From the NCBI GenBank assembly GCA_977017575.1, contig CDRNVI010000164.1, positions 62,001 to 126,000 of the forward strand: 64,000 nt of DNA, read 5' to 3'. Made by a program: the position numbers and the translations under genes. Origin of the DNA: Paramoeba atlantica. Lineage: Eukaryota > Protista > Discosea. Shown here one piece after another: positions 2,603-26,265 of the stretch. Every line of letters begins with the position of its first letter. Position 1 is the first letter of the stretch. A model generated the notes under the pieces. It saw nothing but the letters and a program-made list of their open reading frames with translations. It did not search any database and had not been told where the DNA came from.

Positions 2603-5600
2603 TTAATTTGCAGAGCAATAGGGACGAATAAGATTATTCTGGTGAGGTGTAAACACATTGGGTCCAAGGGGTTTTGTAAAAATATCAGTAAGGTTATCTT
2701 TAGTGGGTACATAATCCAATTCAATCAAGCCATCTTGCAATGCTTTTCTTGTGTAATGATTAAAGGCTTCAATTTGCTTAGTTCTTTGGTTTATATGGGG
2801 AATCTTTGTAATAGCCATCGCAGGTTCAGAATCGGATTGAAGTAAAAAAGGTCTTTTGTACAGGATGCACAACTTAGAGAGAATGTTATCAACAAATTTC
2901 AATTCATGGGATGCTTCAGCAAGGGTGTGGTATTCAGATTCACAACTAAACCAACAAACTTGAGGAGATTTCTTGGAATGCCAGGAAATGGGGGAACTAT
3001 TTGCAAAAATAGCAAAACTATAAGATGAGGATCTGTCTTCTGTAACATCTTGATGGCTTGAGTCAGTTTGGGCAGAAATCACAAGTTCTTTAGTCTCAAA
3101 TTTGGATTTGAGAAACACCAATTTATAATTAGGATATTTGGCAAGATAACCGAGAATTTGCAGAGCAGCTTTGTTATGATTTTCAGTGTGGGTATTCAAG
3201 AAGTGAAAGCATTGGGAAACAGCATATGAAATATCAGAGTGAGTTTTCGTCAACCAAATTAGAGAATCAACAAGGCTTGCATAGGGAAAATCAGTGGGAG
3301 GTTCATCAGGCTTAGGCATAGGCAGAACTTTACTCACGGCAGGAGTATCACTCTTTCTTATTTTGTGGCAGTCAAAACTCTCCAATAAATTGTTGAGGAA
3401 GGCATGCTGATTGAGAGAAATTTCTTTGTAATTTTGTTTCACACCACAACCAAGGAACCAAGAGCATTTTCCACTAGACTTCTACTTGAATCTTTCAATC
3501 AGTTTGGAGTAAATCTCTTCACGGAGCTTTGAACAAGTACAAACATCCAAATTATCATCAACAATGGTTGGGAATAAACAGAAGTTTCCGTCAGGTTCAA
3601 CACGAATGTAGAGATTGAAATCAGCAATCAGACAATGGAATTGCAGTTCTTCAATAAGAAATTTTCAAAAAGTTAGATTCCAACATTATCCAGCAATTGG
3701 CACACCATAGAGAGCTTTGTTCAATCGACAGAGATATTCGGGATGTTCAGGATCTTCAAAACCTTCAGGTTGAGTGACATAATAAACAATATCACCATCA
3801 GGAATGTCAGCTTGGATATAGGCACTTGGGACATCTCCAGAATTCACATCAAGGTCAAACATAGCGGCAATAGCAAATGTTAAATTGAAAGATTCAGTGG
3901 TTGCAGTTCCAGCATAATTATCTTCTTGGTCAAAATTGTGATCTTTTACAAGACTATGTTTTACACGAGAACCGTTTGCACAAAATCGAGCTTTGAACTT
4001 AGATATTACACCATTTTTGGTCTTAATTCGAAATCGCCACAGGCCTTGCATAATAATGTATTTCTTTCCATCCTTGGGGAACTTCAGGGGAGGAGGCACC
4101 AATTCCCAAGTCTTATTTTCAATATGAACATCATATTTTCTTTTGCAAGCTTGTTTCCATTCTTTTTTTTCATTTGAGCGAGCGACTTGCTTGTAGGATC
4201 AAGGGGTAACTTTATCATTAACAACTTGGTCAGCATGGAAGGCATAGTCAAGGAAATCAAGATCTTTGTAACCACGGCTAGGTTCACCAAACGTATTCCA
4301 AGGTATTTTCAGAGCACTGAACACTTTTCCAATAGCACTATGTTGGTAGTCAGGGTCTTGGAAGCGAGCAGAGTGTCTTACTTCTTCAGCTGCATCATCA
4401 GATTCATTTGGTTCAGAGATGTTAATTTCATCATCAGGTTGAGATTGAGTAACAAAATTGAAATCAACTTCAGAATCAGTTTCAGAGTTGTATGTAGAGG
4501 AAGAGTAAGGAGATGCAGATTGGTCTGCAGGGTCATAAGGATCAGAATCATGATCATCTGGTGGGTAATTGAACATTTCATAATTATCGAGGTCAATCGG
4601 CAATTCAGGTTCATTTTCATCAGCAGAGTCATAATCAGTTCCTTCACTTTCTTCATCTTTCATATCTAATTCTGTCATTTGAGGGAGAATTTCAGAATCA
4701 AGGGCTGCAGCAGCTTGAGCAGGATCAACAATTGGAGAAGAAGAGGAACTAGAAGAGGAACAAGAGGAACAAGAGGAAGATGTAGGTGTGTAAGAATCAT
4801 CACTCTAAGTAAAATCGGGAGGAGGCATACTAAAAAGCACCATCTCATCATCATCATCATCACTGTACACATTTGTACTGTAGGTTTTCTCATTCAAAGC
4901 AGTATGTTTTGAATATAAGTTTACAGAAGCAGGAGTGGAATGGCCTATTCTGTTCTCCCTTTCAACATCAACAGGGTAATCATTATCAATTACAATTTCA
5001 GCAGAATCATCAGGATTCTCATGTACACAATCCATGGGATTTGTGTTCATACTCAGAATGTCGTCACGGTCTGATAATTTCGAAAAATCAACGAATTTTT
5101 CATTCAAATAAGTGTTAAAATAGTGTGGGATATTCCCTCTATCAATATGCTTCAACAGGTTCGAAACACCAAAGACATATTCATCAAATACCACACTTGA
5201 ACTTTCAAAAATAGTTTTCTTTACAGGGTCATACAAAATATAACCATTAATTTTTTCTGAGGGGCCAAGATAGATCGCAGGGCGTGCTTTAGGCATCAGT
5301 TTGGTTCTGTTCTTTCGGGGAATGTGCACAAAAGCATGGCAAATAAAAGGGCGAATCAACTCAATATTGGGTTTGCAACCATACAGCTTCTGGAAGGGGG
5401 AAATCTCTTCACCTTCTTTCACAATGTAGGAGCTCACAACACTTGCAAGTTTTTCAACATAATCCCAAAATTGTTCAGACAATCCAGCGTGGATTTGAAT
5501 CGCTTGAGCAGTGTTCCATCGAGTCTCATTTGCACGTTCAGCAACACCATTTTCAGCAGAATCATCTCTACTAGAAAATCTGATATGAATTCCTTTCTCA

Positions 5601-8250
5601 GCGCAATATTGTCCAATTTTCGTTGCAGGACCGACAAATTCCTGAGCGCCATCGCATTGAATGATTTTGACCTTCACATCTAATTGTCTTTGAAGCTTTG
5701 CAATCAGGTTGATCAGCACTTCACCAGCATCACTCTTTTTCTTGAGGAATTCAGATAAATCCATCTTGGAGTAGTTTTCAACAACTGAGAGAGAGTATTT
5801 GTTCTTCCGATAAGAAAGTACATTTTTCTCATGGTTGTCAATGTGCAACATTTCACCAAGTTTTCGTTTTGTTCTTGTACCAGGGGTATGACTCTTCTTT
5901 TTCACTTTGGCCAACTCACAAGCAGTACAAACATTTTGATCCATTCTCAATCTGTGATATTGCAGGGACAAACTGTCAACCACATAAGCATTAATAGTCC
6001 TTTTCAAACCAGAAAAATGACACAATCTATTATGCCAATATTTCCATTCTTTCTCGTGGGTAGGACGGAGGGTTCTACAGATTCTTTTCTTGCGGAGAGG
6101 TTGAGATGAAGAAGCATCCTCAGGGGTTTCATTTTTTGGGTGAGTAACTTCTTCAGCAATATAAGATTGTTGATGGTTGGTTTGACTGGGTAAAGCCAAA
6201 TAATACAAGCTATTGTTCTGTGGACCACTCAAAATCGTCTGGGAATTGCTCAAATTAATCTTCTTTTTCGTCACACGAATTTGGTTAGAATCCAAAATAA
6301 CAGAAGCGTCCCAAGTTTCACACATGTGAGCCACAGAGAGAAGATTCATTTCACAATTGGAGACTACAGAGATGTCTTGAAGAGGTGGCAAATTAGGATG
6401 AATTGCCAAGTCACCTTGCATTGTAACAGGAATCAGATTGCCATTCGCTTGCTTGATGCTTATGGACATTGTGGGTGGAGTGTTTCTTGTTGTGAGATTT
6501 GGATCATTCACAATTGTGTTTGAACAAGCTGAATCAGCAAGAGCAGTTGCTCTATTTGATTGTTTTGCAACAAAAGCAGATTGAATCGAAGATTGAGAAG
6601 AAGAAATGAGAGCAGAAACGCAACAAGAGTAAATAGGAATATTGATTTTATTCATTTTCATCTTCCAAGCATTGATCTTTTGAACAAAAGCATCGAAATT
6701 CACCTTGGCTTGTTGTCCCACAGCACTTTGGTTTGCTGGGTTTGTGTTGCAACCTTTCACAATGTGACTGGTGGCACCACAACAAAAACAGGCTTTAGCC
6801 GGAGGGGTGGGAGGATCTTCCCATCTAGGGTAATTTCAAAACTGGTTGCATGTTAGAGGAGAAGGAATTAGGGGACTATGGCGAGGAGGGCCATTTCCTT
6901 GTCTTCCTTGGCGAGGAGGGGTGACATTTCCTTGTTGATTAGGATTGGCAGCAGAGTTATTCTTCTTCCGAAAAGCAACATAAGCAGTGGCATTCTCCTT
7001 TGTCTTCAAGGCTTGTTTCTTCTTATTGGCACTTGAGCGACTGCCTTCGATTTCTTTTAACTCCAAGAAAGCACTCTCCACTGTCCACTCTCCCACTCTA
7101 AGCAGTCCTCGAAAGGTTTCCCAATGTTGTTGTGGCATGGAATCTCGAATGTAACCCAATTTCTTGTTCATTGGAATCAGCTTCCCTTTTAATGCTTCAA
7201 TGTGAAGAAATAACTTTTTTTTTTTTTTTTCTTTTTTGAGGCAGACTTTATTCAATTAGTAGTTCTTAATCTAAGCCATTTGAATTACATTAAATTATGT
7301 TTGTTTTTAACCTCTAACGAGAGGTGAAGTTTTAAACTTCAGCTTAGTTCAGTCGGTCTTTATGCTGAACTTTAGAACTTCTGCAAGTTCAGGCTGGAGG
7401 ATGCACATCAGAAGGGAGAATAATCCAAAGCTCCTTCCAAGGGAATTTATCCTCAACTTTTTAGCAGACAGGGCTGAGATGTAACCTGTTCCGATTTTCA
7501 CACTTCTTCAAGAGCTCCTCACTCCAATCAAATCACTCTACAGCACCAGAAAAATTTTCTATAATATCGAAAAACTGGGATTTGAACTCGCCCCCCCAGG
7601 GTTGGACATAGTCGAATTTACGACTAAACTACGGGTGCCAACCCTACATGAAGAAATAACTCCTTCAGTCTCAACTCAAAACTAGAGATCGTCTCATTTT
7701 CTCCGATACAACAATCCTCTAACTTACTTTTCACTTCCTTTACATTGTGAGCAATCACAGTACTCAGGTTTAAGGTCAATGTGTCCCAAATAAGTTTTGG
7801 TGTTCTTCTCTTCAAATCACTAAGATACTCCTTCGCTCAACCAATGCAAGTCTTATTCAATAAGTTTGTAAGATTCATTTGATTGTCCATACGGTCATCG
7901 AAACGTCTTTGGTTGATTTGCTGCTTGTACTCCAATTTCTCTTTGTGTCTCACCTCCAACTCCTTTCTTTCTACCAAGAATCTTTTCTTCTCAGCTTCTT
8001 CCATTTTTTCTGTAACCTCCTCCAGCTCCTCCTCAAACTTGATCAGGACAGGTTCACCTGTAGGAACTTTGTCGAGGAATAGATGATGAACAAGATTTTG
8101 GGTGCTGAGCCGAATGAGTGTCTCTTTTCACCAGAGCATGAATTCAATGGTGGATTCACCTTTGAGTTCATTAATCTCAAGTGCACCCTTCCACGTCTTG
8201 TTCTTTGGTTCAAATTCTGGCCAATCTACTACTCTGTAATCATCTTCCAT
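2603..8250 (-). pseudogene. copia gag-pol polyprotein; single frame broken by at least 7 nonsense codons and one insertion
   Basis: ORF fragments 7624-7815, 6836-, 4805-6760, 4199-4678, 3686-4102 and 2603-3442 share one frame once the 446-bp insert plus TSD is removed. ATG at 8250. Stops at 8128, 7837, 6836, 4805, 4199, 3686 and 3482. Confidence 0.9.
7216..7648 (-). mobile_element. SINE-like non-LTR retroposon (433 bp) inserted in copia gag
   Basis: 13-bp TSD TGAAGAAATAACT at 7203-7215 and 7649-7661. Minus-strand AATAAA is followed by a poly(A) tail. The head has A-box-like TAGTTTAGTCG and B-box-like GAGTTCAAATCC. Excision restores gag LKELFLH-IEALKG. Confidence 0.85.
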
Positions 8251-8588
8251 AGTTGAGGATGTGGCGAACATAAAAGAGCGAGAGAGAAAAATGAGAAATG
8301 GTGACAGGAGAAGACGGGCAAGAAAAACCAAGAAAACCACACAAAATCGTGAAAACACACAATTAAAACAAACAGAAAGACAGGCAAAAGGAACAAGAGA
8401 GCAAGAGCAATAAAAAGAAATCGAGTGAAGTTGTTGAACGAATGAGAGAACAGGCACAAGCGAGTGAAAACAAAAACAAAAACGAAAAACAAAAAAACAG
8501 AAAATAAAACGAAAATAAAACAAAAAAATAAAACAAAGAAAGGTGTAGAACACTGAAGTTCTACTGATGACAAGATCAGGCAGAGAGC

Positions 8589-8602
8589 CTAGACTCTTAA
8601 TC
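8589..8602 (-). other. Primer-binding site GATTAAGAGTCTAG, complementary to tRNA-Lys(CUU) positions ~27-40
   Basis: Abuts the LTR end (...TGTCA|GATTAAGAG). Its complement CTAGA-CTCTTAA-TC is an anticodon arm with anticodon CTT. Confidence 0.75.
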
Positions 8603-9130
8603 TGACAAGTGGCAGGGTTTGGTGGAAGAAGATTGCTGAGAAAAGAAAAGAAAGGTGCAAACTTCATTCCATGGTGAGAGCCGGGAATGTGAAAGAAAAC
8701 AAAGTCTCTCATGCGTTTATTTACAAACAGGTTTCAATCACATATTTGTCAATGTGACACCAAGTGCAAAAGCAGAGAAACACACACAAATAAAAGCACA
8801 CATAAGAGACATAAAAACACAACAAGTTTAAGGAAGGGAACAACAGATGACGTCAGCACAAATAAATTCACAGGCTGAAAGATCAGAATATGGAGAATAA
8901 ACTATGCAATCAAATTGGGTCTGAAATAGGGCAAAGGTATTCTTGAAGGCACAATTCAATGATTGATCAATATCTTGGTGTGTAGTTGTCAGATTCAGAT
9001 GGGACTAGCACCATTCGAAAGAGGAAGATGAGGCGCTTCAGGATAGCATAACTCGTGATCATAGAATTCACAAATGATGTTCTCCATTAAGTCAAACATT
9101 CTTCAAACCAAGAATACTGATATTCTAACA
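8603..9130 (-). repeat. 5' LTR of the copia element (528 bp, TG...CA)
   Basis: The minus strand begins TGTTAG (9130) and ends TGTCA (8603) next to the PBS. The first 295 bp match the 3' LTR. The remaining 233 bp are inferred from the PBS position. Confidence 0.8.
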
Positions 9131-9895: not shown

Positions 9896-11049
9896 TTAGG
9901 AGCTTTTGGCTGGTTTAATATCCACTCCCTTTTGTGAAATAAAAATAAAAAGTTTGAATAACATTTCAAGAAAATTGAAAAAGAAAATACATCAAAAGGA
10001 AAATAAGAGAAGAAAAGAGGGGAAAAAGTTCAAAGCAAACCCTTTCTTGAAATGTGGTGATCAATTCAACCACCTTTTGCTGGCCAGAAACTTTTGCAAT
10101 ATCCAAGGCTGTTCGACCACACTAGTAAAGAAAGTTCAAAAAAATGACCACATTACACACACTCCCCTCCAACAACAATAACAATTAAACAAGTCTAAAA
10201 AACTGCTCACAATAAAGTAACATCAAAGAAAATCAAAACTACTGTAAGATCAATGTTGGCTCCATGTTCAAGAAGAATTTCCACAATTTCTTCAAAACCA
10301 TTGTTAGCAGCAAATTGAAGAGCAGTCCATCCTTCCTTCACAAAAAGAAACAAAACAACAAATTATCACAACCAAAAATGAGAAAACAAATAAAAAAAGA
10401 AAAGAAAATCAACATCTTCTTGAAGATCAACATTGGATCCATGTTCAATCAGAATTTTGACAATTTCTTCATAACCTTCCAGAGTTGCAAAGTGAAGAGG
10501 AGTCCATCCATACTGATCAAAAGAAATTTTACAAAAGAACAAAATTATCGCATCACCTTCCTCCCACAACAACAGAACAATATCACAAATAACAAATGAG
10601 AAAACAAATATTAAAAAGAAAATCAAAACTTTATCTTGAAGATTTACATTGGGTCCATGTTCAATCAGAATTTTCACAGTTTCTACAAAACCTTTGGAGG
10701 CAGCATTGTGAAGAGCAGTCTGTTCAACTTTTTCTCTCCATGTTTGGCTCTCCTCCTGAACAAAAGAAGAAGTTATTATCATCCACAGAAATAAATCACA
10801 AAATTAAAAAACAAAGGAATGCAAAGAAAAATCAACTTCAAAAAAACAAAAAGAAAAAGAGGAGAGAAGAAGAAAAACAAAAGAAGAAAGAAGAAAGAAA
10901 GAAAAAAAACAATTTTTGAAAACCTTGTGTTTGAAGTCAATATCAAGTTGCTTGGATTGAAGAAGAACTTTGACAAGTTCTTCATCTCCTCTCTCAACAG
11001 CATCATAAAGTTTCTTGTTTTCTGATCTCTTCTCTTCTTCTTCTTCCAT
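9896..11049 (-). CDS. Ankyrin-repeat protein A (6 exons), ends GVDIKPAKSS*
   Basis: Exons read TALHNAASKG, YGWTPLHFA, EGWTALQFAANNG and CGRTALDIA. Phase-0 introns. Terminal exon 9896-9928. Confidence 0.85.
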
Positions 11050-11231
11050 CTTCTTTTTTTGTTTTCTTGATGATTTTGTGTTGGGGTGAGACAGAGAGAA
11101 AGAGCAAAAAGAGAAACAAAAACTAATTTCCTTTTTTAGTATTTCCTTTTGAGAAAAATTCCTTTTTTGTTCTAAACTTTTCTTTTTGGGTTTTTGGAGG
11201 AAGAGAGAGGAGAGGGAAGAGAGAGAGAGAG

Positions 11232-13487
11232 ATGCGTGTTTTCAGTGTGGTTGTTGTGGGAACACTCCTAATAACATTGGCCTCTTCAGATTTTGCTGAT
11301 TATCTCAACAATATAAGAAACTCAGCAAATGTCAATTCTCCCACGCTCGCAGAGTGTGGGGTGCTCTCCCACACCTTCGATGGACAAGAAGGTGGTGGTC
11401 TTGGACCTTGGACACTCAACAATCGCTCTCATGACCATATCTCATGTGCCTTGTGTAATCGAGTGAATGTTCCTTTTGGTGGTAATTCTGCTGGCATCAT
11501 TTTGAACGTGAAAAACAATCATTTCTTCTGTTACTATTCAGATGATGGGGGCACTGGGAATGCCAACTGGTGTCATCCTCCTGGACCAAGTTCCACTTGC
11601 GTCCCTGGATGCTCGACAATGATTGGAGAGAATTTCTGGCACCCAACATGGTGCACTGGATCGTGTTTTGGACATGGCCCATATTATCCAGATGACCTCC
11701 ACCGTTTCATGGAGGCAAATCTCCAAAGTATGAACAGTGAACTAATCATGGATCCAACTGTTTACATGGAAAATCTGTACAAACCAGCGCGAGAGAGCAG
11801 CCTTCTAGCTTTGTCGAATTGTAACCATGATTTGTGGCGAAAAGTAGAAGCTGATCTGGGCAGGAAAGTCCCATTAGTTAAATATGATAAGGAGAGAGGA
11901 GACCACCCATACAGCTGTATTGAGTGTCCAGAAGAATTTGATAATTTTGGAGAAGAGGAAGAAGAGGAAGAGGACGAGGACGAGGAAGAGGAAGAAGGAG
12001 AAACGCTCCCAACACTTTTGGGTCCGCTTGCGTTCGAAGAATGTAATTTCTCAGGGAGTGTGGTTCTTGATATGGAGGAAGTCCCTCTATTTTATACAAG
12101 TGCTTCTTGTTCTTGCTCTCTCTTTCTCTCTCATCTTGAAATGAGCGAACACACTGAGATGAGAGAACCGCCCTCTCAAATTGAAAATTGTTTAGTGTCA
12201 TTTCAGTTCATTTTTCTCTCTCTTTTCTCTCTTTTCACAAAATTCTTTTTTAACTCTTCAAAAATAGGGGTGAGAATGTTGAGACAACGAGTGTGATTTT
12301 TCCTACTGACGAACCTGTGATTCAAAGTAGTTGTTTGGGACTCCTTCAAGTTCTTTCTCTTTTTTTCTTCTTTCTTTTATTCTTTTCATTTTTTTCATTT
12401 TTTGAAATGTTGAAAAAAAAAGGAGAATGGTGTTGTGACAGGGTTTTGGTATTATGAGACTGCTTCAAAATGGGACATTCTCATTCAAACATATGAAAAC
12501 AACAAATTTTCCAAGCAACTTGAGTTTCACTCACTCTTTGACAACTTTTTGTCATTCAATTTTTATTCTCTTGCAGGTCTTTATTTTCCTTTCTTTCTTT
12601 TTGATTTGATTGATTTGTATGGTCTTTCAATTTTGAGATTAATTTAGTTTTTTCAAAACAGAGAACACAGACGGAAAAAAGAGTGCGCTGGTTTTCGGAA
12701 GTATCACCCATTTTAAGATTTGTCTCTCATTGGAAGCGAATGAGATGTTCACATTGGCAGCTTTTCAAGAAAACGATGGTGTTCAAAGCTTTCAAATGAA
12801 AAGTTATGAAAACCCTGTAATTCTTGCAGACGGTTCTCCACAACAAATAGTCGCTTTTTCTGTTCCCACAGGAGTACCTTATGCTCTCTCATGGAAACTC
12901 GATCCAGTGCAAAATTTCCCATCTCCTGCAGAAAGCGGGTTTGGTTTCTTTTTTATTATTTTTTTATTTCAAACCAACCCAACATCAAAATAGAAGAACA
13001 AGATAAAAAATGATTTACTTTTTTGATGTTTTTTAGATATAAAATGCAATCGATGGTATTTGGAATTGAGAATCAGGAAAAATATTTTTGTTTGGAAAGT
13101 AACACCCAAAAGAAAGGGAAAGTACAGTTGTTCTGGCCAGGAAATTCTGTTGCTGATGAAGTCTTTAATTTTTCTGGGAGTATGTTAAGTTTGACTACAA
13201 TAAGTGAAGGAGTTCGTTTGGTTTATCAAAGAGGGTCTTCGATTTGGTGTGTTGACTTGCCAGTTGCGTTTTTCGAGAAAACCAAGAATCCTATTCCAGT
13301 TCGATTGATAGCGAAAGTCAAAAAAAGTTTGAATGTAGTAACCACCCCAATTACCCAAAGCGAAGAGGGACTCATTGTGGTTCAATACAACGAGAAAGAA
13401 TATGGAGCAAAAGTTACCTCTTTTCAATCGTTACCACTCCAACCAGGAAAAGATCTCCCATCACCATCACCACCGCCGCGGGGGTAA
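11232..13487 (+). CDS. Secreted multi-domain protein, copy 1: signal peptide, Cys-rich N-domain, poly-Glu linker, beta-rich C-domain, Pro/Ser tail
   Basis: Signal-like MRVFSVVVVGTLLITLASS. ORFs 11232, 12435, 12730 and 13023 can be joined by GT-AG introns. Three conserved paralogues. Confidence 0.85.
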
Positions 13488-13679
13488 ATTCGAAAATACC
13501 GAAATCGCTCACTACAAACCGCCAACCACATGATTTCATTGAGAAAAAAAGCAACCAATGAGTGTTGTCAGAGCAAACAATAAATAATCAACAAAGGATT
13601 GATTTCAACTTTATTCTCTACATAATCTCAACATTCAATTTTCTTCTCAACCTCTCACTCTCTCTAGAGAGTTAAGTTT

Positions 13680-14987
13680 TCATTTTTTTTGAGCTGGTTT
13701 GATATTTTTGCCCTACAAAAATATTAAAAAAAAACAGTTAGGAGAAAGATTCAATCTTTTTTTTCAGTTTCTAAATTAAAATGAAGAGAAGAAAAAAGAA
13801 ATCAAACCCTTTCTTGAAATGTGTTGATTAACTCAACAATTCTTTTATCTCTTGTTGTTTCCAAGACTGTGTGACCACTCTAACAAAAAAGAAGTTCAAA
13901 AAAAAAAGAACTGCCCGCTCTCAGAACATATTCACACAAAAAAAATGAAAAAAAATGAAAAACAAGATTTCGGAGATGAATGTTTGGTCCATATTCAAGA
14001 AGAATTTTCACATCAGAACCATTCTTAATAGCAAGGTGAAGAGGAGTCTCTCCCCACTGAACAAAAAGTATTTTTCAATAAAAAGATAAAACAAATCACA
14101 CACAACCCATTGCAATCAACAAAAATAAGAAAAAATAAGAAAGAAAAACCAACAGAAAAGAAAAAAAATAGAAAACAAAGAAAGAAAAGAAAATCAAAAC
14201 TTCATCTTGAAGATCAATGTCAGATCCAGATTTAAGCAGAATTTTCAGAATTTCTTCAAAACCACTGTAAGCAGCAAAGTGAAGAGCAGTCTTCCCATAC
14301 TTTAACATAATGAATTTTTTTAAAAAAAAGGAAGAAAACAAATAGTTCCCATCTCAATAATTACAAAAACAAAAACTGAAAGAAAAACAAGCAAAAAAAA
14401 AAGAAAATCAAAACTACGTTTTGAAGATTAACATTGGATCCATATTCAACAAGAATTTGCACAATTTCTTGAAAACCTTCCAAAGCAGCGTTCTGAAGAG
14501 GAGTCCATCCACACTTAACAAAAAGAAGTTAAAAAAAAAGAACAAATCATCACATTATCTTCCCACAACAACAGAACAAGAACAAATAAAAATGAGAAAA
14601 CAAATATTAAAAGAGAATCAAAACTCTATCTTGAAGATTTACATTGGATCCATGTTCAATCAGAATTTTCACAACTTCTTCAAAACCTTTGGAAGCAGCT
14701 TTGTGAAGAGCAGTCTGTTCGTTCTGAACAAAAGAAGAAGTTATTATCACACACAACCATCAATCAATAAAAATAAAAAATGAAAAAACAATGAAAAATC
14801 AACTTCAAAAAAACAAAAGAAGAAGAAAGAGAAAAAGAAAAAAAACCAAGCCGCAGCCCTTGTGTTTGAAGTCAATATCAAGTTGCTTGGATTGAAGAAG
14901 AACTTTGACAAGTTCTTCATCTCCTCTCTCAACAGCATCGTAAAGTTTCTTGTTTTCTGATCTCTTCTCTTTTTCTTCTTCTTCCAT
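13680..14987 (-). CDS. Ankyrin-repeat protein B (7 exons), ends GKNIKPAQKK*
   Basis: Exons read EQTALHKAASKG, CGWTPLQNAA, YGKTALHFAA, SGETPLHLAI and SGHTVLET. Terminal exon 13680-13712. Confidence 0.85.
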
Positions 14988-15191
14988 CTTCTTTTTTTGT
15001 TTTCTTGATGATTTTGTGTTGTGGTGAGACAGAGAGAAAGAGCAAAAAGAGAAACAAAAAACTAATTTCCTTTTTTAGTATTTTCGTGATTCTTTTTTAG
15101 GAAAAATTCCTTTTTTGTTCTAAACTTTTCTTTTTGGGTTTTTGGAGTTTATCCCTCTCGAAGAGGAAGAGAGAGGAGAGGGAAGAGAGAG

Positions 15192-17494
15192 ATGCGTGTT
15201 TTCGAGGTGGTTGTTGTGGGAACACTCCTAATAACATTGGCCTCTTCAGATTTTGCTAATTATCTCAACAAAATAAGAAACTCAGCAAGTGTCAATTCTC
15301 CCACACTCACAGACGCTGGAGTCCTCACCCACACCTTCGATGGACAAGAAAATGGTGGCCATAAACCTTGGACAGTCAACAATCTCACAAATGACCATAT
15401 CTCATGTGCCTTGTGTAATCGAGTGAATGTTCCTTTTGGTGGCGGTTCTGCTGGCTTCATTTTGAACGTGAAAAACAATCATTTCTTCTGTTACTATGCC
15501 GATGATGGAGGAACTGGTTCTGACAACTGGTGTCATCCTCCTGGCCCAAGCTCTACTTGCATCCCTGGATGCTCGACATTAATGGGAAATAACGTGTGGT
15601 ACCCAGCATGGTGCACTGGATCATGTCAATCCAGAGGACCTTACAAACCAAAAGACCTCCGCCATTTCATGAAGGTAAATCTCCGTAGCATGAACAGTGA
15701 ACTGATCATGGATCCAACTGTGTACATGGAAAATCTGTACAAACCAGCGCGAGAGAGCAGCCTTCTAGCTTTGTCAAACTGTGACCGTAATTTGTGGCGA
15801 AAAGCAGAAGCTGATCTGGGCAGGAAAATCCCATTAGTTAGATACAATGGTGGAGACCACCCATACAGCTGTATTGAGTGTCCAAAAGAATTTGATAATT
15901 TTGGAGAAGAGGAAGAAGAAGAGGAAGAAGAAGAGGAAGAGGAAGAGGAAGAGGAAGAAGGAGAAACGCTCCCAACATTTTTGGGTCCGCTTGCGTTCGG
16001 AGAATGTAATTTCTCAGGGAGTGTCGTTCTTGATATGGAGGAAGTTCCTCTATTTTATACAAGTGCTTCTTGTTCTTGCTCCCTCTTTCTCTCTCATCTT
16101 GAAGTGAGCGAACACACTGAAACAAGAGAACCTTCCTCTCAAATTGAAAATTGTTTAGTGTCATTTCAGTTCATTTTTCTCTCTCTTTTCTCTCTTTTCT
16201 CCCTTTTCTCAAAATCGTTTTTTAATCTTCACAAACCTTTTTAACTCTTCAAAAATAGGGGTGAGAATGTTGAGACAACGAGTGTGATTTTTCCTACTGA
16301 CGAACCTGTGATTCAAAGCAGTTGTTTGGGACTCCTTCAAGTTCTTTTATTCTTTTTCTTCTTTCTTTTATTCTTTTTTTTGAAATGTTGAAAAAGGAGA
16401 ATGGTGTTGTGACAGGGTTTTGGTATTACGAGACTCCTTCAAAATGGGACATTCTCATTCAAACGTACGAAAACAACAAATTTTCCAAGCAACTTGAGTT
16501 TCACTCACTCTTCGACAACTTTTTGTCATTCAATTTTTATTCTCTTGCAGGTCTTTATTTTCCTTTCTTTCTTTTTTGATTTGATTGATTTGTATGGTCT
16601 TTCAATTTTGAGATTAATTTAGTTTTTCAAAACAGAGAACGCGGATGGGAAAAAGAGTGCACTGATTTTCGGAAACATCACTCATTTTAAAATTTGTCTC
16701 TCATTGGAAGCGAATGAGATGTTCACATTGGCAGCTTTTCAAGAAAACGATGGTGTTCAAAGCTTTCAAATGAAAAGTTATGAAAAATCTATCATTCTTG
16801 CAGACGGTTCTCCACAACAAATAGTCGCTTTTTCTGTTCCCAAAGGAATACTTCATGCTCTCTCATGGAAACTAGATCCAGTGCAAAATTTCTCATCTCC
16901 CACTGAAAGCGGGTTTGGTTTCTTTTTATTATTTTTTTGACAAAAATTTCAAACCAACCCAACATCAAAATAGAAGAAGAACAAGATAAAAAATGATTTA
17001 CTTTTTTGATGTTTTTTAGATATAAAATGCAATCGATGGTATTTGGAATTGAGAATCAGGAAAAATATTTTTGTTTGGAAAGTAACACCCAAAAGAAAGG
17101 GAAAGTGCAGTTGTTCTGGCCAAGAAATTCTGTTGCTGATGAAGTCTTTAATTTTTCTGGGAGTATGTTAAGTTTGACTGCAATAAGGGAAGGAGTTCGT
17201 TTGGTTTATCAAAGAGGGTATTCGATTTGGTGTGTTGACTTGCCAGTTGCGTTTTTCGAGAAAACCAAGAATCCTATTCCTGTTCGATTGATAGCGAAAG
17301 TCAAAAAAAGTTTGAATGTAGTAACCACCCCAATTACCCAAAATGAAGAAGAGGGATTCATTGTGGTTCAATACAACGAGAAAGAATATGGAGCAAAAGT
17401 TACCTCTTTTCAATCGTTACCACTCCAACCAGGAAAAAATCCCCCACCTTCACCATCACCATCACCATCACCATCACCATCACTGCTTGGGTAA
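15192..17494 (+). CDS. Secreted multi-domain protein, copy 2
   Basis: Paralogue of 11232..13487 with the same exon structure. Confidence 0.85.
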
Positions 17495-17743
17495 ATTCGA
17501 AAATACCGAAATCGCTCACTACAAACCGCCAACCACACGATTTCATTGAGAAAAAAAGCAAACAATGAGTGTTGTCAGAGCAAACAATAAATAATCAACA
17601 AAGGATTGATTTCAACTTTATTCTCTACATAATCTCAATGTTCAATTTTCTTTTTTTTTTTGATTCTTTTTATTGTTTGTGTACCCTCTTAATGCTCTGA
17701 AAGTTCTTTCCTCAACTCTCACTCTCTCCAGAGAGTTGAGTTT

Positions 17744-19121
17744 TCATTTTTTTTGAGCTGGTTTGATATTTTTGCCCTGCAAAAAAAATGGTAAAAAAAA
17801 AATAGGAGAAATTCAATCTTTTTTTTCTGGTTTCTAAATTAAAATGAAGAGAAGAAGAAAGAAATCAAACCCTTTCTTGAAATGTGTTGATTAATTCAGC
17901 AATTCTTTTATCTCTTTTCAGATCCAAGACTGTGTCACCACTCTAACAAAAAAGAAGTTCAAAAAAAAAGAACTACCCCCTCTCAAAACATATTCACACA
18001 AAAAAAAAATGAAAAAAAATGAAAAACCTGATTTTGGAGATGAATGTTTGGTCCATATTCAAGAAGAATTTTCATATTTTCTTCAAAACCATTCTTAATA
18101 GCAAGGTGAAGAGGAGTCTCTCCCCACTGAACAAAAAGTATTTTTCAATAAAAGGATAAAACAAATCACACACAACCCATTACAATCAACAAAAATAAGA
18201 AAAAATAAGAAAGAAAAACCAACAGCAAAGAAAAAATAGAAAACAAAGAAAGAAAAGAAAAGAAAACTTTATCTTGAAGATCAATGTCAGATCCAGATTC
18301 AATCAGAATTTTCAGAATTTCTTCAAAACCAGAGTAAGCAGCAAGGTGAAGAGCAGTCTTCCCATACTTAACAAAATGAAGTTTTAAAAAAAGAATAAAA
18401 CAAATCACACACAACCATCTCCCCATCACAATTAGAAAAACAAAAATTGAAAGAAAAACAAGCAAAAAGAAAGGAAAATCAAAAAACTTGGGTTAGAAGG
18501 TGAATGTTGGATCCATGTTCAAGAAGGATTTTCACAACTTCTTTTCTCCCTTTGTAAACAGCTCCGTGAAGAGGGGTCCATCCATACTAAATAAAATGAA
18601 GTTTTAAAAAAGAACAAATAACACACACATAACCATCTCTCTCTCTCACCCTCTCCATCACATGAGAAAATAAATAATAAAAAAAAGAAAATCAAAACTT
18701 GATTTTGAAGATCAACATTGGATCCATGTTCAATCAGAATTTTCACAATTTGTTCAAAACCTTTGGAGGCAGCATTGTGAAGAGCAGTCTGTTCAACTTT
18801 TTCTCTCCATGTTTGGCTCTCCTCCTGAACAAAAGAAGAAGTTATTATCACCCACAGAAATAAATCACAAAATAAAAAAACAAAGGAGTGCAATGAAAAA
18901 TCAACTTCAAAAAAACAAAAAGAAAAAGAGGAGAGAAGAAGAAAAACAAAAGAAGAAAGAAGAAGAAAGAAAAAAAAACAATTTTTGAAAACCTTGTGTT
19001 CGAAGTCACTATTAAGTTGCTTGGAGTGAAGAAGAACTTTGACAAGTTCTTCATCTCCTCTCTCAACAGCATCATAAAGTTTCTCATTTTCTGATCTCTT
19101 CTCTTCTTCTTCTTCTTCCAT
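17744..19121 (-). CDS. Ankyrin-repeat protein C (7 exons), ends GKNIKPAQKK*
   Basis: Exons read EQTALHNAASKG, YGWTPLHGAVYKG, YGKTALHLAA, SGETPLHLAI and SGDTVLDL. Terminal exon 17744-17776. Confidence 0.85.
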
Positions 19122-19330
19122 CTTCTTTTCTTGTTTTCTTGATGATTGTGTGTTGTGGTGAGACAGAGAGAAAGAGCAAAAAGAGAAACAAAAACTAATT
19201 TCCTTTTTTAGTATTTCCTTTTGAGAAAAATTCCTTTTTTGTCAAAAACTTTTCTTTTTGGGTTTCTGGTTTTTTGGGTTTTTGGAGCCCATCAGACAAG
19301 GAAGAGAGAGGAGAGGGAAGAGAGAGAGGG

Positions 19331-20053
19331 ATGCGTGTTTTCAGTGTGGTTGTTGTGGGAACACTCCTAATAACATTGGCCTCTTCAGATTTTGCTAATT
19401 ATCTCAACAAAATAAGAAACTCAGCAAGTGTCAATTCTCCCACACTCACAGACGCTGGAGTCCTCACCCACACCTTCGATGGACAAGAAAATAGTGGCCG
19501 TAAAGCATGGACAGTCAACAATCTCTCAAATGACCATATCTCATGTGCCCTGAGCAATCGAGTGAATATCCCTTTTGGTTACAATTCTCCTGGTTTTATT
19601 TTGAACGTGAAAAACAATCATTTCTTCTGTTACTATGCCGATGATGGAGGAACTGGTTCTGGGAACTGGTGTCATCCTCCCGGACCAAGCTCTACTTGCG
19701 TCCCTGGATGCTCAACATTAATGGGAAATAACGTGTGGTACCCAGCATGGTGCACTGGATCATGTCATTCCAAAGGACCTTACAAACCTAAAGACCTCCA
19801 CCGTTTCCTGAAGGTCAATTTCAAAAGTATTCCCAGCGAACTGATCATGGATCCAACTGTGTACATGGAAAATCTGTACAAACCAGCGCGAGAGAGCAGC
19901 CTTCTAGCTTTGTCAAACTGTGACCGTAATTTGTGGCGAAAAGCAGAAGCTGATCTGGGCAGGAAACTCCCTTTAGTTCGATATGATGGGGGGAATGCAA
20001 ACCGCCCATACAGCTGTATTGAGTGTCCAAAAGAATTTGATAATTTTGGAGAA

Positions 20054-20088
<35 letters not shown>

Positions 20089-21606
20089 GGAAGAGGAAGA
20101 GGAAGAGGAAGAAGGAGAAACGTTACCAACACTTTTGGGTCCGCTCGCGTTGGGGGAATGTAATTTCTCAGGGAGTGTGGTGATTGATCAGGAGGAAGTT
20201 CCTCTATTTTATACAAGTGCTTCTTGTTCTTGCTCTCTCTTTCTCTCTCATCTTGAAGTGAGCGAACACACTGAAACAAGAGAACCTTCCTCTCAAATTG
20301 AAAATTGTTTAGTGTCATTTCAGTTCATTTTTCTCTCTCTTTTCTCTCTTTTCACAAAATTCTTTTTTAACTCTTCAAAAATAGGGGTGAGAATGTTGAG
20401 ACAGCGAGTGTGATTTTTCCTACTGACGAACCTGTGATTCAAAGTAGTTGTTTGGGACTCCTTCAAGTTCTTTCTCTTTTTTTCTTCTTTCTTTTATTCT
20501 TTTCATTTTTTTCATTTTTTGAAATGTTGAAAAAAAAAGGAGAATGGTGTTGTGACAGGGTTTTGGTATTATGAGACTGCTTCAAAATGGGACATTCTCA
20601 TTCAAACATATGAAAACAACAAATTTTCCAAGCAACTTGAGTTTCACTCACTCTTTGACAACTTTTTGTCATTCAATTTTTATTCTCTTGCAGGTCTTTA
20701 TTTTCCTTTCTTTCTTTTTGATTTGATTGATTTGTATGGTCTTTCAATTTTGAGATTAATTTAGTTTTTTCAAAACAGAGAACGCGGATGGGAAAAAGAG
20801 TGCACTGATTTTCGGAAGTATCACCCATTTTAAAATTTGTCTCTCATTGGAAGCGAATGAGATGTTCACATTGGCAGCTTTTCAAGAAAACGATGGTGTT
20901 CAAAGCTTTCAAATGAAAAGTTATGAAAACCCTGTAATTCTTGCAGACGGTTCTCCACAACAAATAGTCGCTTTTTCTGTTCCCAAAGGAATACTTCATG
21001 CTCTCTCATGGAAACTAGATCCAGTGCAAAATTTCCCATCTCCTGCGGAAAGCGGGTTTTGTTTCTTTTTATTATTTTTTTTTATTGCAAGCCTAGAGAA
21101 GAAGAACAAAAAAATGATTTACTTTTTTGATGTTTTTTAGATATAAAATGCAATCGATGGTATTTGGAATTGAGAATCAGGAAAAATATTTTTGTTTGGA
21201 AAGTAACACCCAAAAGAAAGGGAAAGTGCAGTTGTTCTGGCCAGGAAATTCTGTTGCTGATGAAGTCTTTAATTTTTCTGGGAGTATGTTAAGTTTGACT
21301 GCAATAAGTGAAGGAGTTCGTTTGGTTTATCAAAGAGGGTATTCAATTTGGTGTGTTGACTTGCCAGTTGCGTTTTTCGAGAAAACCAAGAATCCTCTTC
21401 CCATTCGATTGATAGCGAAAGTCAAAAAAAGTTTGAATGTAGTAACCACCCCAATTACCCAAAACGAAGAGGGATTCATTGTGGTTCAGTACAAGAATGA
21501 ACATGGAGCAAAAGTTACCTCTTTTCAATTGTTACCACTCCAACCAGGAAAAAATCCCCCATCTCCAAGTCCACCATCACCTTCATCACCATCACTGCTT
21601 GGGTAA
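19331..21606 (+). CDS. Secreted multi-domain protein, copy 3
   Basis: Paralogue; ATG at 19331 within ORF 19274..20413. Confidence 0.85.
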
Positions 21607-25090: not shown

Positions 25091-25802
25091 ATGGAAGATC
25101 AAGAAAAGAGCAAATTTCGAAAAAATGTTTGGCCAAGAATCCGAAATTTCATTGGAGGTTACTTCAGTGGAATGGCACTTGTGATGGCTGGCCATCCCTT
25201 TGACACAATCAAAGTCCGTCTCCAAACAGAAGGAAAAGGTGGCAAGTTTTCTGGACCATTAAATTGTCTTCGAGTTACAATCCAAAAAGAAGGACTTCGA
25301 GGTCTTTATAAAGGAGTTACTCCACCACTTTTGGCGACAGGAGTTGTCAACAGTTGTCTTTTTGGTTTACAAGGGCTTTCCATCCACCATCTTAAAAAGA
25401 TTCGAGGGAGAGAGAATGAAGTGACGCAGGTTCAAGAAGTTGCTGTGAGCGCTGTCTTTACAGGGTTCTTGATTTCTTTTCTTGTCACTCCAATGGAAGG
25501 AATCAAAGCTCGACTCCAGGTTTTTCCCCCCTCCCTCCCCTCAAAACTCAACAACTGCTGAAAACACTTTCTTCTCCACATTTCTAATTTCTTCTTTCTA
25601 CTCAAAAAAAAAACAAAAAAAGGTTCAATACAACGCGAAAGGAGACGTCGCCAAATTCAAAGGCCCAATCGATTGTATCAAAAAGGTTGTCAAAGAACTC
25701 GGAATCCAAAGAGGGCTCTACCGCGGCTGGGTCCCCACAACTCTCTGCCGAATGTCAAACTACAGCTATTTTGGAACATATGAAATGATGAGAAGATATT
25801 TG

Positions 25803-25833
<31 letters not shown>

Positions 25834-26265
25834 CTTCTTCTCCCAAATTGACTCTTGGGGCAAGTCTTGTTGCTGGGGGGACTGCTGGTGTTGCTTATTG
25901 GTTCAGTTGTTATCCTCTTGATGTTGTCAAAAATCGAATCATGGCAGGTTTTTTAACATTTTTTTGTTCTCAAATTTTATCATTTTTTGTTTGTTGTTGG
26001 TTTTTTTTTGGAATAATATCTTTTGAGTTGTTTTCTTTGATCTTGAAAATAAATGTCTTTCTTTTCTTCTCTCTCTCTCTCGGCAGCTCCAGATACAAAT
26101 CCACCAAAATATCGAGGAGTGTTTCATACTTCTTCTGTGATTTACCGAGAAAATGGAATGAAAGGTTTCTTTGTTGGATTTACTCCCGCTTTGTTACGAT
26201 CAGTCCCTGCGAATGCTGCTTGTTTTCTTGCTTATGAAGTTGTCATGCATTTGCTCCCTGAATGA
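25091..26265 (+). CDS. Mitochondrial carrier (SLC25), carnitine/acylcarnitine- or YMC-like
   Basis: Three PX[DE]XX[KR]X[KR] motifs: HPFDTIKVR, TPMEGIKAR, YPLDVVKNR. C-terminus RSVPANAACFLAYE. 2 introns. Confidence 0.92.

What the first reader, a model, noticed from the sequence alone, without database searches (positions are those of the whole stretch)
9896..21606. Triplicated head-to-head secreted-protein/ankyrin cassette: candidate eukaryotic effector-immunity pair
A ~4-kb unit is repeated three times. A cytosolic-looking ankyrin gene and a signal-peptide gene share ~180-210 bp between start codons (11049/11232, 14987/15192, 19121/19331), so they are probably co-regulated. Both partners vary between units while the linkage is kept. 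In bacterial polymorphic toxin systems ankyrin proteins are a known immunity class. Inference: a secreted toxin or effector with a cognate inhibitor, or a ligand/receptor allorecognition pair.
Basis: inference. Interest (0 to 1): 0.75.

Follow-up and report, generated by a model that had tools for sequence, protein, structure and literature searches.

The report
Secreted ADP-ribosyltransferase-like genes with ankyrin neighbours
Three tandem copies of a head-to-head gene pair in an amoeba-like genome join a small ankyrin-repeat gene to a secreted protein whose head has the fold of bacterial ADP-ribosylating toxins. At the sister locus the ankyrin partner has decayed while the toxin-like genes stay intact, so the pairing looks like co-duplicated neighbours, not a toxin-antidote system.

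Summary
Window 9896-21606 carries three tandem units of about 4 kb. Each unit has an intact intron-rich ankyrin-only gene (- strand) whose start codon lies 182-209 bp from that of a five-exon signal-peptide gene (+ strand).

The secreted protein is about 640 aa. It has a signal peptide, a 217-aa Cys-rich N-domain, a poly-Glu linker and a roughly 385-aa C-terminal region of unknown fold. The N-domain matches no Pfam family and no PDB sequence. A profile search found 146 distant relatives. With them AlphaFold2 gave pLDDT 91.7, and the nine best structural matches are all ADP-ribosyltransferase-superfamily proteins (best CteC, Z 8.8). H47, S71, D105 and E170 lie in the same order as CteC's R65, S97, D134 and E220.

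The genome holds only six such genes: three here and three on contig C148. On C148 all three toxin-like genes are intact, but every ankyrin partner has decayed: two are deletion relics and one has no in-frame start and an in-frame stop. The ankyrin belongs to a very large cassette-built family (at least 64 cap exons) whose members sit head-to-head with many unrelated genes.

Verdict: a new, uncurated family of secreted ART-fold proteins. The ankyrin linkage is best explained by co-duplication. Earlier notes of this scan had already described the ankyrin family elsewhere in this genome.

The parts
9896..11049 (-). Ankyrin gene 1. Six exons: 11049-10924, 10755-10630, 10512-10414, 10335-10243, 10121-10041 and 9928-9896. 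About 185 aa, with an N-cap, 3 internal repeats and a C-cap. No signal peptide.
   Evidence: Pfam Ank E 1e-18. Exons and GT..AG sites were read.
11050..11231 (.). Divergent intergenic region of 182 nt, a presumed bidirectional promoter. It contains the 15-mer ACAAAAAAGGAATTT at 11156-11170.
   Evidence: The 15-mer occurs 9 times in the 45.7-Mb genome, 5 of them upstream of ART-like genes.
11232..13487 (+). ART-like secreted protein gene 1. Exons: 11232-12196, 12268-12349, 12423-12576, 12662-12938 and 13037-13487. About 642 aa: signal peptide residues 1-19, ART-fold domain 20-236, poly-Glu 238-255, C-terminal region 256-642.
   Evidence: Splice sites, phases and conservation of exon lengths in six paralogues. 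AF2 pLDDT 91.7 for residues 20-236. ART fold matches.
13680..14987 (-). Ankyrin gene 2. Intact, with 6 repeats. Exon 1 is lengthened by 12 nt in frame.
14988..15191 (.). Divergent intergenic region of unit 2 (204 nt).
15192..17494 (+). ART-like secreted protein gene 2. Exons: 15192-16159, 16259-16340, 16397-16550, 16636-16912 and 17020-17494.
17744..19121 (-). Ankyrin gene 3. Intact, with 6 repeats.
19122..19330 (.). Divergent intergenic region of unit 3 (209 nt).
19331..21606 (+). ART-like secreted protein gene 3. Exons: 19331-20313, 20385-20466, 20540-20693, 20779-21055 and 21141-21606.

Best explanation
The locus is one of two tandem arrays of a six-member gene family. The family encodes secreted, disulfide-rich proteins with four parts: a signal peptide, an N-terminal ADP-ribosyltransferase (ART)-fold domain, an acidic linker, and a family-specific C-terminal region of about 385 aa.

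Most likely mechanism (inferred, not shown): the protein enters the secretory pathway and the C-terminal region binds a target surface. The ART-fold head then uses NAD+ to ADP-ribosylate a target outside the producer's own cytosol, in prey, a competitor or a host cell, as AB-type bacterial ART toxins or ecto-ARTs do.

The ankyrin genes are members of the genome's very large family of cassette-built, surface-variable ankyrin binders. One such gene happened to lie head-to-head with the ancestral ART-like gene and was copied along with it. The linkage is co-duplication of neighbours that share a short divergent promoter, not an obligatory toxin-antidote pair.

Shown: the repeat structure, the gene models, the ART fold, the family size, and the decay of the ankyrin partners on C148. 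Inferred: secretion, catalysis, and a toxin or exoenzyme role.
For: Fold and motif:
- The N-domain has no Pfam or PDB sequence match. A profile search of 1.84 billion proteins gave 146 relatives.
- With 76 of them AF2 reached pLDDT 91.7 and pTM 0.90.
- VIA-align: CteC mono-ART Z 8.8 over 163 residues, then DarT, SopF, Tpt1/KptA and CopC. The nine best rows are all ART superfamily, and OspC3, pierisin, scabin, PARP-1 and PltA appear further down among unrelated rows. Foldseek probability is 0.99 for 8ux2.
- Conserved residues sit on the expected strands. The beta-1 residue is H in 54 and R in 11 of 66 relatives; S71 is in beta-2; D105 is kept in 70/71; E170 at the start of beta-5 is kept in 64/66. 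This parallels CteC R65/S97/D134/E220 (PMC10810742).

Secretion:
- Relatives carry the extracellular PAN and CBM_1 modules.
- The signal-peptide-like N-terminus and 12 conserved Cys are seen.

Family and selection:
- Only six copies exist in the genome, all with open exons and intact splice sites.
- dN/dS is 0.24-0.65, which means purifying selection.

Co-duplication:
- The C148 units keep the homologous promoter plus relics of the ankyrin gene, so the ancestral unit was the pair. The ankyrins there are dead.
- The ankyrin cap exon has at least 64 genomic matches, and Ank_2 gave 733 first-look candidates.
- Sixteen sampled family members face varied partners.
Against: - No enzymatic, expression or binding data exist.
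- The window's proteins differ from the family consensus at four otherwise strongly conserved positions near the putative active site (R69H, S73A, Y168N, N169S). They could therefore be catalytically altered or inactive.
- Z 8.8 is only just above the background best-Z of 7-8 quoted for this aligner. The case rests on the run of ART hits plus the motif, and no residue-level superposition was available.
- The three ankyrins in the window are intact and share a conserved 180-210-bp promoter region with their partners. A functional relationship in this array, or protection in trans of the C148 genes, is therefore not excluded.
- The C-terminal region is unidentified.
Confidence: 0.6

Rival explanations
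1. Toxin-antidote (effector-immunity) module. The cytosolic ankyrin binds and neutralises its neighbouring ART-like toxin, for example after mis-sorting or re-uptake. The pair is co-regulated from the shared promoter, and the three intact ankyrins of this array could also cover the C148 toxins in trans.
For: - The head-to-head arrangement with 182-209 bp between start codons is kept in all three units. The promoter region is 96-98% identical between units.
- The ancestral unit at both loci was the pair.
- The partner has a toxin-type fold.
- The ankyrin repeats vary most at positions 1, 3, 8, 11, 12, 14 and 33, the canonical binding face.
- Ankyrin immunity proteins exist in bacterial polymorphic toxin systems (established knowledge, not tested here).
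Against: - All three C148 ART-like genes are intact while their ankyrins are deleted or carry a lost start and an in-frame stop.
- The ankyrin family is huge and is mostly paired with unrelated genes.
- A signal-peptide protein is not exposed to the producer's cytosol.
This is a weak negative.
- There are no binding data.
Confidence: 0.12
2. Catalytically inactive ART-like module. The N-domain keeps the fold but serves as an extracellular binding or adhesion domain, for example for glycans or NAD-like ligands. The family would then be surface or matrix proteins, not enzymes or toxins.
For: - The window's proteins have lost four positions that are 80-90% conserved in distant relatives (R69H, S73A, Y168N, N169S).
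- Relatives are fused to the binding modules PAN and CBM_1.
- The C-terminus is a Pro/Ser-rich tail typical of extracellular stalks.
Against: - H47, S71, Y102, D105 and E170 are invariant in all nine close sequences. E170 and D105 are nearly invariant across the whole family.
- The substitutions are shared by all six paralogues and by the three ENA relatives, which are under purifying selection.
Confidence: 0.2
3. Allorecognition ligand-receptor pair of the Dictyostelium tgrB1/tgrC1 kind. Two polymorphic partners are expressed from one divergent promoter and recognise each other between cells.
For: Divergent promoter, multi-copy, and variation in both partners.
Against: - The ankyrin protein has no signal peptide or membrane segment by inspection, so it cannot meet a secreted ligand at the cell surface.
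- The ankyrins are lost at C148.
- The secreted partner has an enzyme or toxin fold.
Confidence: 0.03

Closest known systems
CteC, the ubiquitin-Thr66 mono-ADP-ribosyltransferase effector of Chromobacterium violaceum (PDB 8ux2, 8htf; ARTC clade, R-S-E motif)
   Same: - It is the best structural match (VIA Z 8.8, 163 aligned residues; Foldseek probability 0.99).
- The candidate catalytic residues come in the same order: beta-1 basic residue, beta-2 Ser, a mid-domain Asp, beta-5 Glu.
- Both carry an inserted subdomain between the Asp and the Glu.
   Different: - Identity is only 12% and no sequence-level relationship is detectable.
- The beta-1 residue is His, not Arg, in the window's proteins and in most relatives.
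- The insertion is a Cys-rich hairpin rather than CteC's helical ubiquitin-binding domain.
- The protein is eukaryotic, intron-bearing, signal-peptide-secreted and disulfide-rich, not delivered by a type III system.
Bacterial polymorphic toxin systems with ankyrin-type immunity proteins, and ART toxin-immunity pairs such as Tre1-Tri1
   Same: A toxin-fold domain is encoded next to a small repeat protein. There are several paralogous copies with a variable toxin-like domain and a more constant remainder.
   Different: - Here the neighbour gene is dispensable in cis: it is dead or deleted in 3 of 6 units.
- It belongs to a huge general ankyrin family.
- The genes are divergent eukaryotic genes with introns, not an operon.
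- No immunity function is shown.
Vertebrate ecto-ARTs (ARTC1-5) and AB-type eukaryotic ART toxins such as pierisin
   Same: They are secreted or extracellular, disulfide-stabilised eukaryotic ART-fold proteins. Pierisin also has an N-terminal ART head followed by a large C-terminal binding region, and it appears in the fold list.
   Different: - There is no sequence similarity and the motif differs (H-S-E with Asp, against R-S-E).
- The C-terminal region is not a recognisable lectin and matches nothing.
Cassette-built hypervariable ankyrin ('natural DARPin-like') gene family of this genome, described in earlier notes of this scan
   Same: The three ankyrin genes have the same build: a dedicated N-cap exon, one 33-aa repeat per phase-0 exon, a C-cap exon, and variation concentrated on the binding face.
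   Different: These members happen to sit head-to-head with ART-like genes. Most family members face other genes.

Membership tests
ADP-ribosyltransferase (ART) superfamily | Split beta-sheet ART fold | tested here: met
   The AF2 model of residues 20-236 has pLDDT 91.7 and pTM 0.90. The nine best VIA-align rows are all ART-superfamily chains: CteC Z 8.8, DarT 5.6, SopF 5.1, DarT1 5.0, then DarTG, Tpt1, DarT, Tpt1 and CopC. Foldseek probability is 0.94-0.99 for CteC chains.
ADP-ribosyltransferase (ART) superfamily | Catalytic triad on beta-1 / beta-2(3) / beta-5: [H or R] - [S/T or Y] - [E/D/Q] | tested here: met
   H47 lies at the end of predicted beta-1 (H 54 and R 11 of 66 relatives). S71 lies in beta-2 (53/69). 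E170 is the first residue of beta-5 (64/66). D105 (70/71) parallels CteC D134. Placement is by predicted strands, not by residue-level superposition.
ADP-ribosyltransferase (ART) superfamily | NAD+ binding and ADP-ribosyl transfer or NADase activity | not testable with these tools
   This needs biochemistry. The window's proteins deviate from the family consensus at R69H, S73A, Y168N and N169S.
Curated ART sequence families (Pfam ART, ADPrib_exo_Tox, Tox-ART-HYD/HYE and others) | Significant match to the family HMM | tested here: not met
   No ART family matched the window's proteins at E up to 1. None matched any of the 76 aligned family members or 20 longer relatives. The profile found no PDB sequence match.
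Toxin-immunity (polymorphic toxin) module | The immunity gene is kept next to every toxin gene | tested here: not met
   Three of six ART-like genes (C148) have only relics or a pseudogene of the ankyrin, while the toxin-like genes stay intact.
Toxin-immunity (polymorphic toxin) module | The immunity protein specifically binds and neutralises its cognate toxin | not testable with these tools
   No multimer prediction or binding assay was on hand. Three pairs are too few for a co-variation test.
Ankyrin-repeat proteins | Tandem 33-residue Ank repeats matching Pfam Ank models | tested here: met
   PF00023 E 1.1e-18, PF12796 E 8e-17. Repeat exons were read.
tgrB1/tgrC1-like allorecognition pair | Both partners are surface-exposed membrane proteins | tested here: not met
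   The ankyrin proteins are 185-220-aa repeat-only proteins with an acidic N-terminus and no hydrophobic segment. This was judged by inspection only.

The most novel reading that the evidence does not exclude
A eukaryotic counterpart of polymorphic toxin-immunity systems. Members of the amoeba's hypervariable ankyrin binder repertoire would act as cytosolic neutralisers of its own secreted ART-fold toxins. The intact C164 ankyrins would cover all six toxins in trans. The more divergent ART head and the homogenised C-terminal delivery region would mirror the variable-toxin, constant-delivery logic of bacterial systems.
Probability: 0.1. Interest if true: 0.8.

Novelty: new variant of a known kind. 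Interest (0 to 1): 0.42.

Why it matters
The N-domain defines a family of at least about 150 sequence clusters of extracellular ART-fold domains. They occur in protists, and one viral protein (BFVD G8DH01) matches the fold. No Pfam model and no solved structure covers the family by sequence, and the library of papers searched holds no report of it for Paramoeba or Neoparamoeba.

If the domain is active, it would be a eukaryotic, signal-peptide-secreted ADP-ribosylating exoenzyme with its own C-terminal module. That would make it a candidate weapon or surface-modifying enzyme of a marine amoeba.

The finding also gives a clean negative example. A conserved head-to-head 'pair' that looks like toxin and immunity is shown, by the decay of one partner at the sister locus, to be co-duplicated neighbours.

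Tried and rejected
- AF2 on the 9-sequence alignment A1 failed (pLDDT 28), so that model was discarded.
- Pfam on all exons, PDB sequence searches with a single protein and with the profile, and Pfam on 96 relatives gave nothing for the N-domain.
- ESM Atlas leads were at chance level: DUF5846 and OspC for the N-domain, LpqB propeller for exon 5. Pfam did not confirm them.
- The weak SUKH_5 and DUF2750 hits on exon 5 (E 0.03-0.06) were treated as chance.
- Positive selection was tested and not found. Pairwise dN/dS is 0.24-0.65. Sliding windows peak at about 1.0 for residues 45-74 only.
The ENA contigs carrying the relatives P0001-P0003 could therefore not be inspected for ankyrin neighbours.
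- As a substitute I compared contig lengths of ENA ankyrin hits with those of the ART-bearing contigs. None matched, which is a weak negative.
- A JGI metagenome scan with A1 found nothing, and A2 was not usable for that tool.
- Literature searches for ARTs in Paramoeba or Neoparamoeba found nothing relevant.
It was redone from coordinates only.
- The joined spliced protein was not built or searched. The exons were searched apart by reference, so the C-terminal region (end of exon 1 plus exons 2-5) was neither folded nor searched as a whole.
- No signal-peptide or transmembrane predictor was available, so those calls were made by eye.


Full report
**Setting.** The window is contig C164:62001-126000 of a 45.7-Mb, 248-contig eukaryotic assembly. 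It has about 35% G+C and short GT..AG introns of about 70-170 nt. The nearest named relative of any protein found here is a Paramoeba atlantica transcript, a cluster mate of P0004. Earlier notes of this scan also call the organism a marine amoeba or Paramoeba. I treat that as probable, not shown. The array is flanked by a copia-like retroelement upstream and a mitochondrial-carrier gene downstream.

**Observation.** The repeat finder shows 300-nt blocks recurring three times, at spacings of 3960-3991 and 4115-4154 nt and 86-100% identity.

- Each unit holds a minus-strand ankyrin gene (Pfam Ank E 1e-18 to 3e-8) and a plus-strand gene that starts with a signal-peptide-like sequence.
- I derived the gene models by reading splice sites and comparing paralogues.
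- The ankyrin genes are 9896-11049, 13680-14987 and 17744-19121. Each has a dedicated N-cap exon, one 33-aa repeat per phase-0 exon, a C-cap exon and a 10-codon last exon.
- All three ankyrin genes are intact. They have 5, 6 and 6 repeats.
- The secreted-protein genes have five exons. Gene 1 is 11232-12196, 12268-12349, 12423-12576, 12662-12938 and 13037-13487. Genes 2 and 3 are given under 'parts'.
- The stretch after 'FYT' in exon 1, which at first looked intronic, is coding. Between the two clusters it shows mostly synonymous changes and no indels, and only the phase-2 donor at 12197 restores the frame of exon 2.
- The protein is about 642 aa: signal peptide 1-19, Cys-rich N-domain 20-236, poly-Glu 238-255, and a C-terminal region 256-642 that ends in a Pro/Ser-rich tail.
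Every search used single exons by reference, so the C-terminal region was never searched or folded as a whole.

**What the secreted protein is.**

- Pfam, the PDB sequence search and the word-index protein search left the N-domain open. The word search found only three ENA proteins of 67-73% identity from a related organism.
- I therefore used the one large HMMER search with the 9-sequence profile. It gave 146 proteins at E <= 1e-3, 14 of them at <= 1e-10.
- These relatives have no Pfam domain over the matched region. A few carry PAN or CBM_1 modules beside it, both of which are extracellular.
- AF2 with the 9-sequence alignment failed (pLDDT 28). With a 76-sequence alignment it gave pLDDT 91.7 and pTM 0.90.
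- Foldseek against the PDB placed seven CteC chains first (probability 0.82-0.99, E 0.006-0.075), with DarT at ranks 9 and 25.
- The Foldseek-independent VIA-align search gave CteC Z 8.8 (163 residues, rmsd 4.0). Then came DarT/DarTG (5.6, 5.0, 4.5, 4.1), SopF (5.1), Tpt1/KptA (4.2, 3.4) and CopC (2.9). OspC3, pierisin-1, scabin, PARP-1 and PltA appear lower, among unrelated rows.
- Z 8.8 alone is near that aligner's stated background. But the nine best rows are all ART-superfamily members, and no other fold competes for the top.
- Column statistics on the 71 distant sequences show near-invariant residues on the strands where ARTs carry their catalytic residues:
  - beta-1 ends in H47 (H 54, R 11 of 66);
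  - beta-2 carries a D-R-x-S-x-S motif (S71 in 53/69);
  - Y102 is aromatic in 71/71 and D105 is kept in 70/71;
  - beta-5 starts with Y-N-E (E170 in 64/66).
- CteC's essential residues are R65, D134 and E220, with S97 as the motif serine (PMC10810742). They come in the same order with similar spacing.
- I conclude that the N-domain is an ART-fold domain of a family not yet curated.
- The window's six paralogues and their three ENA relatives keep H47, S71, Y102, D105 and E170. They differ from the family consensus at R69H, S73A, Y168N and N169S, so activity is plausible but uncertain.
- BFVD contains one clear viral member of the family: G8DH01, E 1.7e-9, TM 0.68.
- The C-terminal region matches nothing. 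Pfam gave no hit, the ESM Atlas gave only a chance-level lead, and the word search found only the window's own proteins plus P0167. P0167 lies on a 48,702-bp ENA contig, the same length as the contig recorded for P0002, so probably the same one.

**Family size and history.**

- The genome has exactly six detectable copies of both the N-domain and the last exon. Three are here and three are on C148 at a 2.9-kb spacing.
- All six have open exons of identical length (82, 154 and 277 nt) and canonical splice sites.
- Pairwise dN/dS of the mature N-domain is 0.24-0.65. Sliding windows reach about 1.0 only around residues 45-74. Selection is therefore purifying with some relaxed patches, and diversifying selection is not demonstrated.
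- Within each array the 3' half, introns included, is 95-100% identical. Exon 1 is 81-92% identical, with dS 0.14-0.32. So the 3' halves have been homogenised, presumably by gene conversion, while the ART heads stayed distinct.
- P0001 shares the window copy 1 variant of the insertion subdomain, although its N-terminus is of the C148 type. This points to mosaic exchange, or to variants older than the split between the two organisms.

**The ankyrin partner.** Four lines of evidence bear on the proposed pair.

1. On C148 the only ankyrin signal by tblastn lies head-to-head with the first ART-like gene. That gene has no ATG in the ankyrin reading frame: the only ATG is out of frame and runs into a stop. 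It also has an in-frame TAA in the repeat exon at L009:7292-7390.
2. The 640-bp spacers upstream of the other two C148 copies keep the homologous promoter. Beyond it there are only relics. One spacer holds a decayed first exon (start codon changed to ACG) plus half a repeat exon. The other holds only a copy of the last ankyrin exon. So the ancestral unit at both loci was the pair, and the ankyrin was lost three times while the ART-like genes were kept intact.
3. The ankyrin is an ordinary member of a very large family. Its 42-aa N-cap exon has 64 matches across many contigs, and Ank_2 gave 733 first-look candidates. Sixteen sampled members lie head-to-head, 130-460 nt away, with varied partners: a few signal-peptide proteins, several cytosolic-looking proteins and other ankyrins. 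Several unlinked members are closer to the window's ankyrins in the cap exon (66-69% identity) than the C148-linked one (59%).
4. The repeats vary most at positions 1, 3, 8, 11, 12, 14 and 33, the canonical binding face. This fits the 'hypervariable binder' description in earlier notes, but it is a property of the whole family, not of this pairing.

The closest ankyrin hits from the related ENA organism sit on contigs whose lengths differ from those of the three ART-bearing ENA contigs.

**Mechanism and verdict.**

- Best reading (confidence 0.6): a small family of secreted ART-fold proteins, probably NAD+-dependent ADP-ribosylating exoenzymes or AB-like toxins. The conserved C-terminal region would serve binding or delivery.
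- The ankyrin neighbours were carried along by duplication of a compact divergent gene pair.
- The 15-mer ACAAAAAAGGAATTT occurs nine times in the genome, five of them in these promoters, including one C148 unit that has lost its ankyrin. This suggests the promoter serves the ART-like gene.
- The toxin-antidote reading keeps about 0.12, because the window's three ankyrins are intact and could act in trans.
- An inactive binding module keeps about 0.2.
- An allorecognition pair keeps about 0.03, since the ankyrin has no export signal.

**Novelty and interest.**

- The cassette as such is ordinary tandem co-duplication, and the ankyrin family has already been described by this scan on other DNA of this genome.
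- The new element is the ART-fold family itself. It is eukaryotic, secreted and disulfide-rich, has an H/R-S-(D)-E constellation, and is invisible to Pfam and to PDB sequence searches.
- Searches of the paper library found no report of ARTs in Paramoeba or Neoparamoeba.
- I rate it a new variant of a known kind, with moderate interest (0.42).

Noticed in passing
window 11232-13487, 15192-17494, 19331-21606: Within each array the 3' half of the ART-like genes, introns included, is 95-100% identical. Exon 1 is only 81-92% identical (dS 0.14-0.32). Homogenisation, presumably gene conversion, stops short of the ART head.
   Followed up: partly
window 11156-11170, 15104-15118, 19228-19242; G000:C148:322702-322716 and 328575-328589: The 15-mer ACAAAAAAGGAATTT occurs 9 times in the 45.7-Mb genome, 5 of them in the promoters of ART-like genes. 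The other 4 sites (C34, C53, C139, C140) were not inspected.
   Followed up: partly
L009:6768-8552 (G000:C148:328767-330551): This is an ankyrin pseudogene head-to-head with an intact ART-like gene. It has no ATG in the ankyrin frame and an in-frame TAA in the repeat exon at L009:7292-7390. Its first intron holds a long (CTTT)n microsatellite at L009:6920-7005.
   Followed up: yes
P0001 compared with window 11232-12098 (alignment A1): A relative from another organism (ENA) shares the window copy 1 variant of the Cys-rich insertion subdomain, although its N-terminus is of the C148 type. This suggests mosaic exchange between paralogues, or variants older than the species split.
   Followed up: no
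BFVD entry G8DH01 (fold search): A 219-aa viral protein matches the ART-fold model at E 1.7e-9 and TM 0.68 (22% identity). The family therefore has at least one viral member. Many distant relatives look like G+C-rich algal proteins.
   Followed up: no
window 4805-8712 (- strand): A copia-like retroelement lies directly upstream of the array (Pfam SH3_retrovirus E 6e-21, gag_pre-integrs).
   Followed up: no
window 25482-26237 (+ strand): A mitochondrial carrier gene fragment (Pfam Mito_carr E 2e-18) lies downstream of the array. The ORFs between 21840 and 24877 have no family match.
   Followed up: no
G000:C178:94523-94983, C179:61492-61887, C207:1188-1648: Ankyrin N-cap exons of the same family lie head-to-head with each other about 200-270 nt apart. 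Divergent pairing is thus a common layout for this family.
   Followed up: partly
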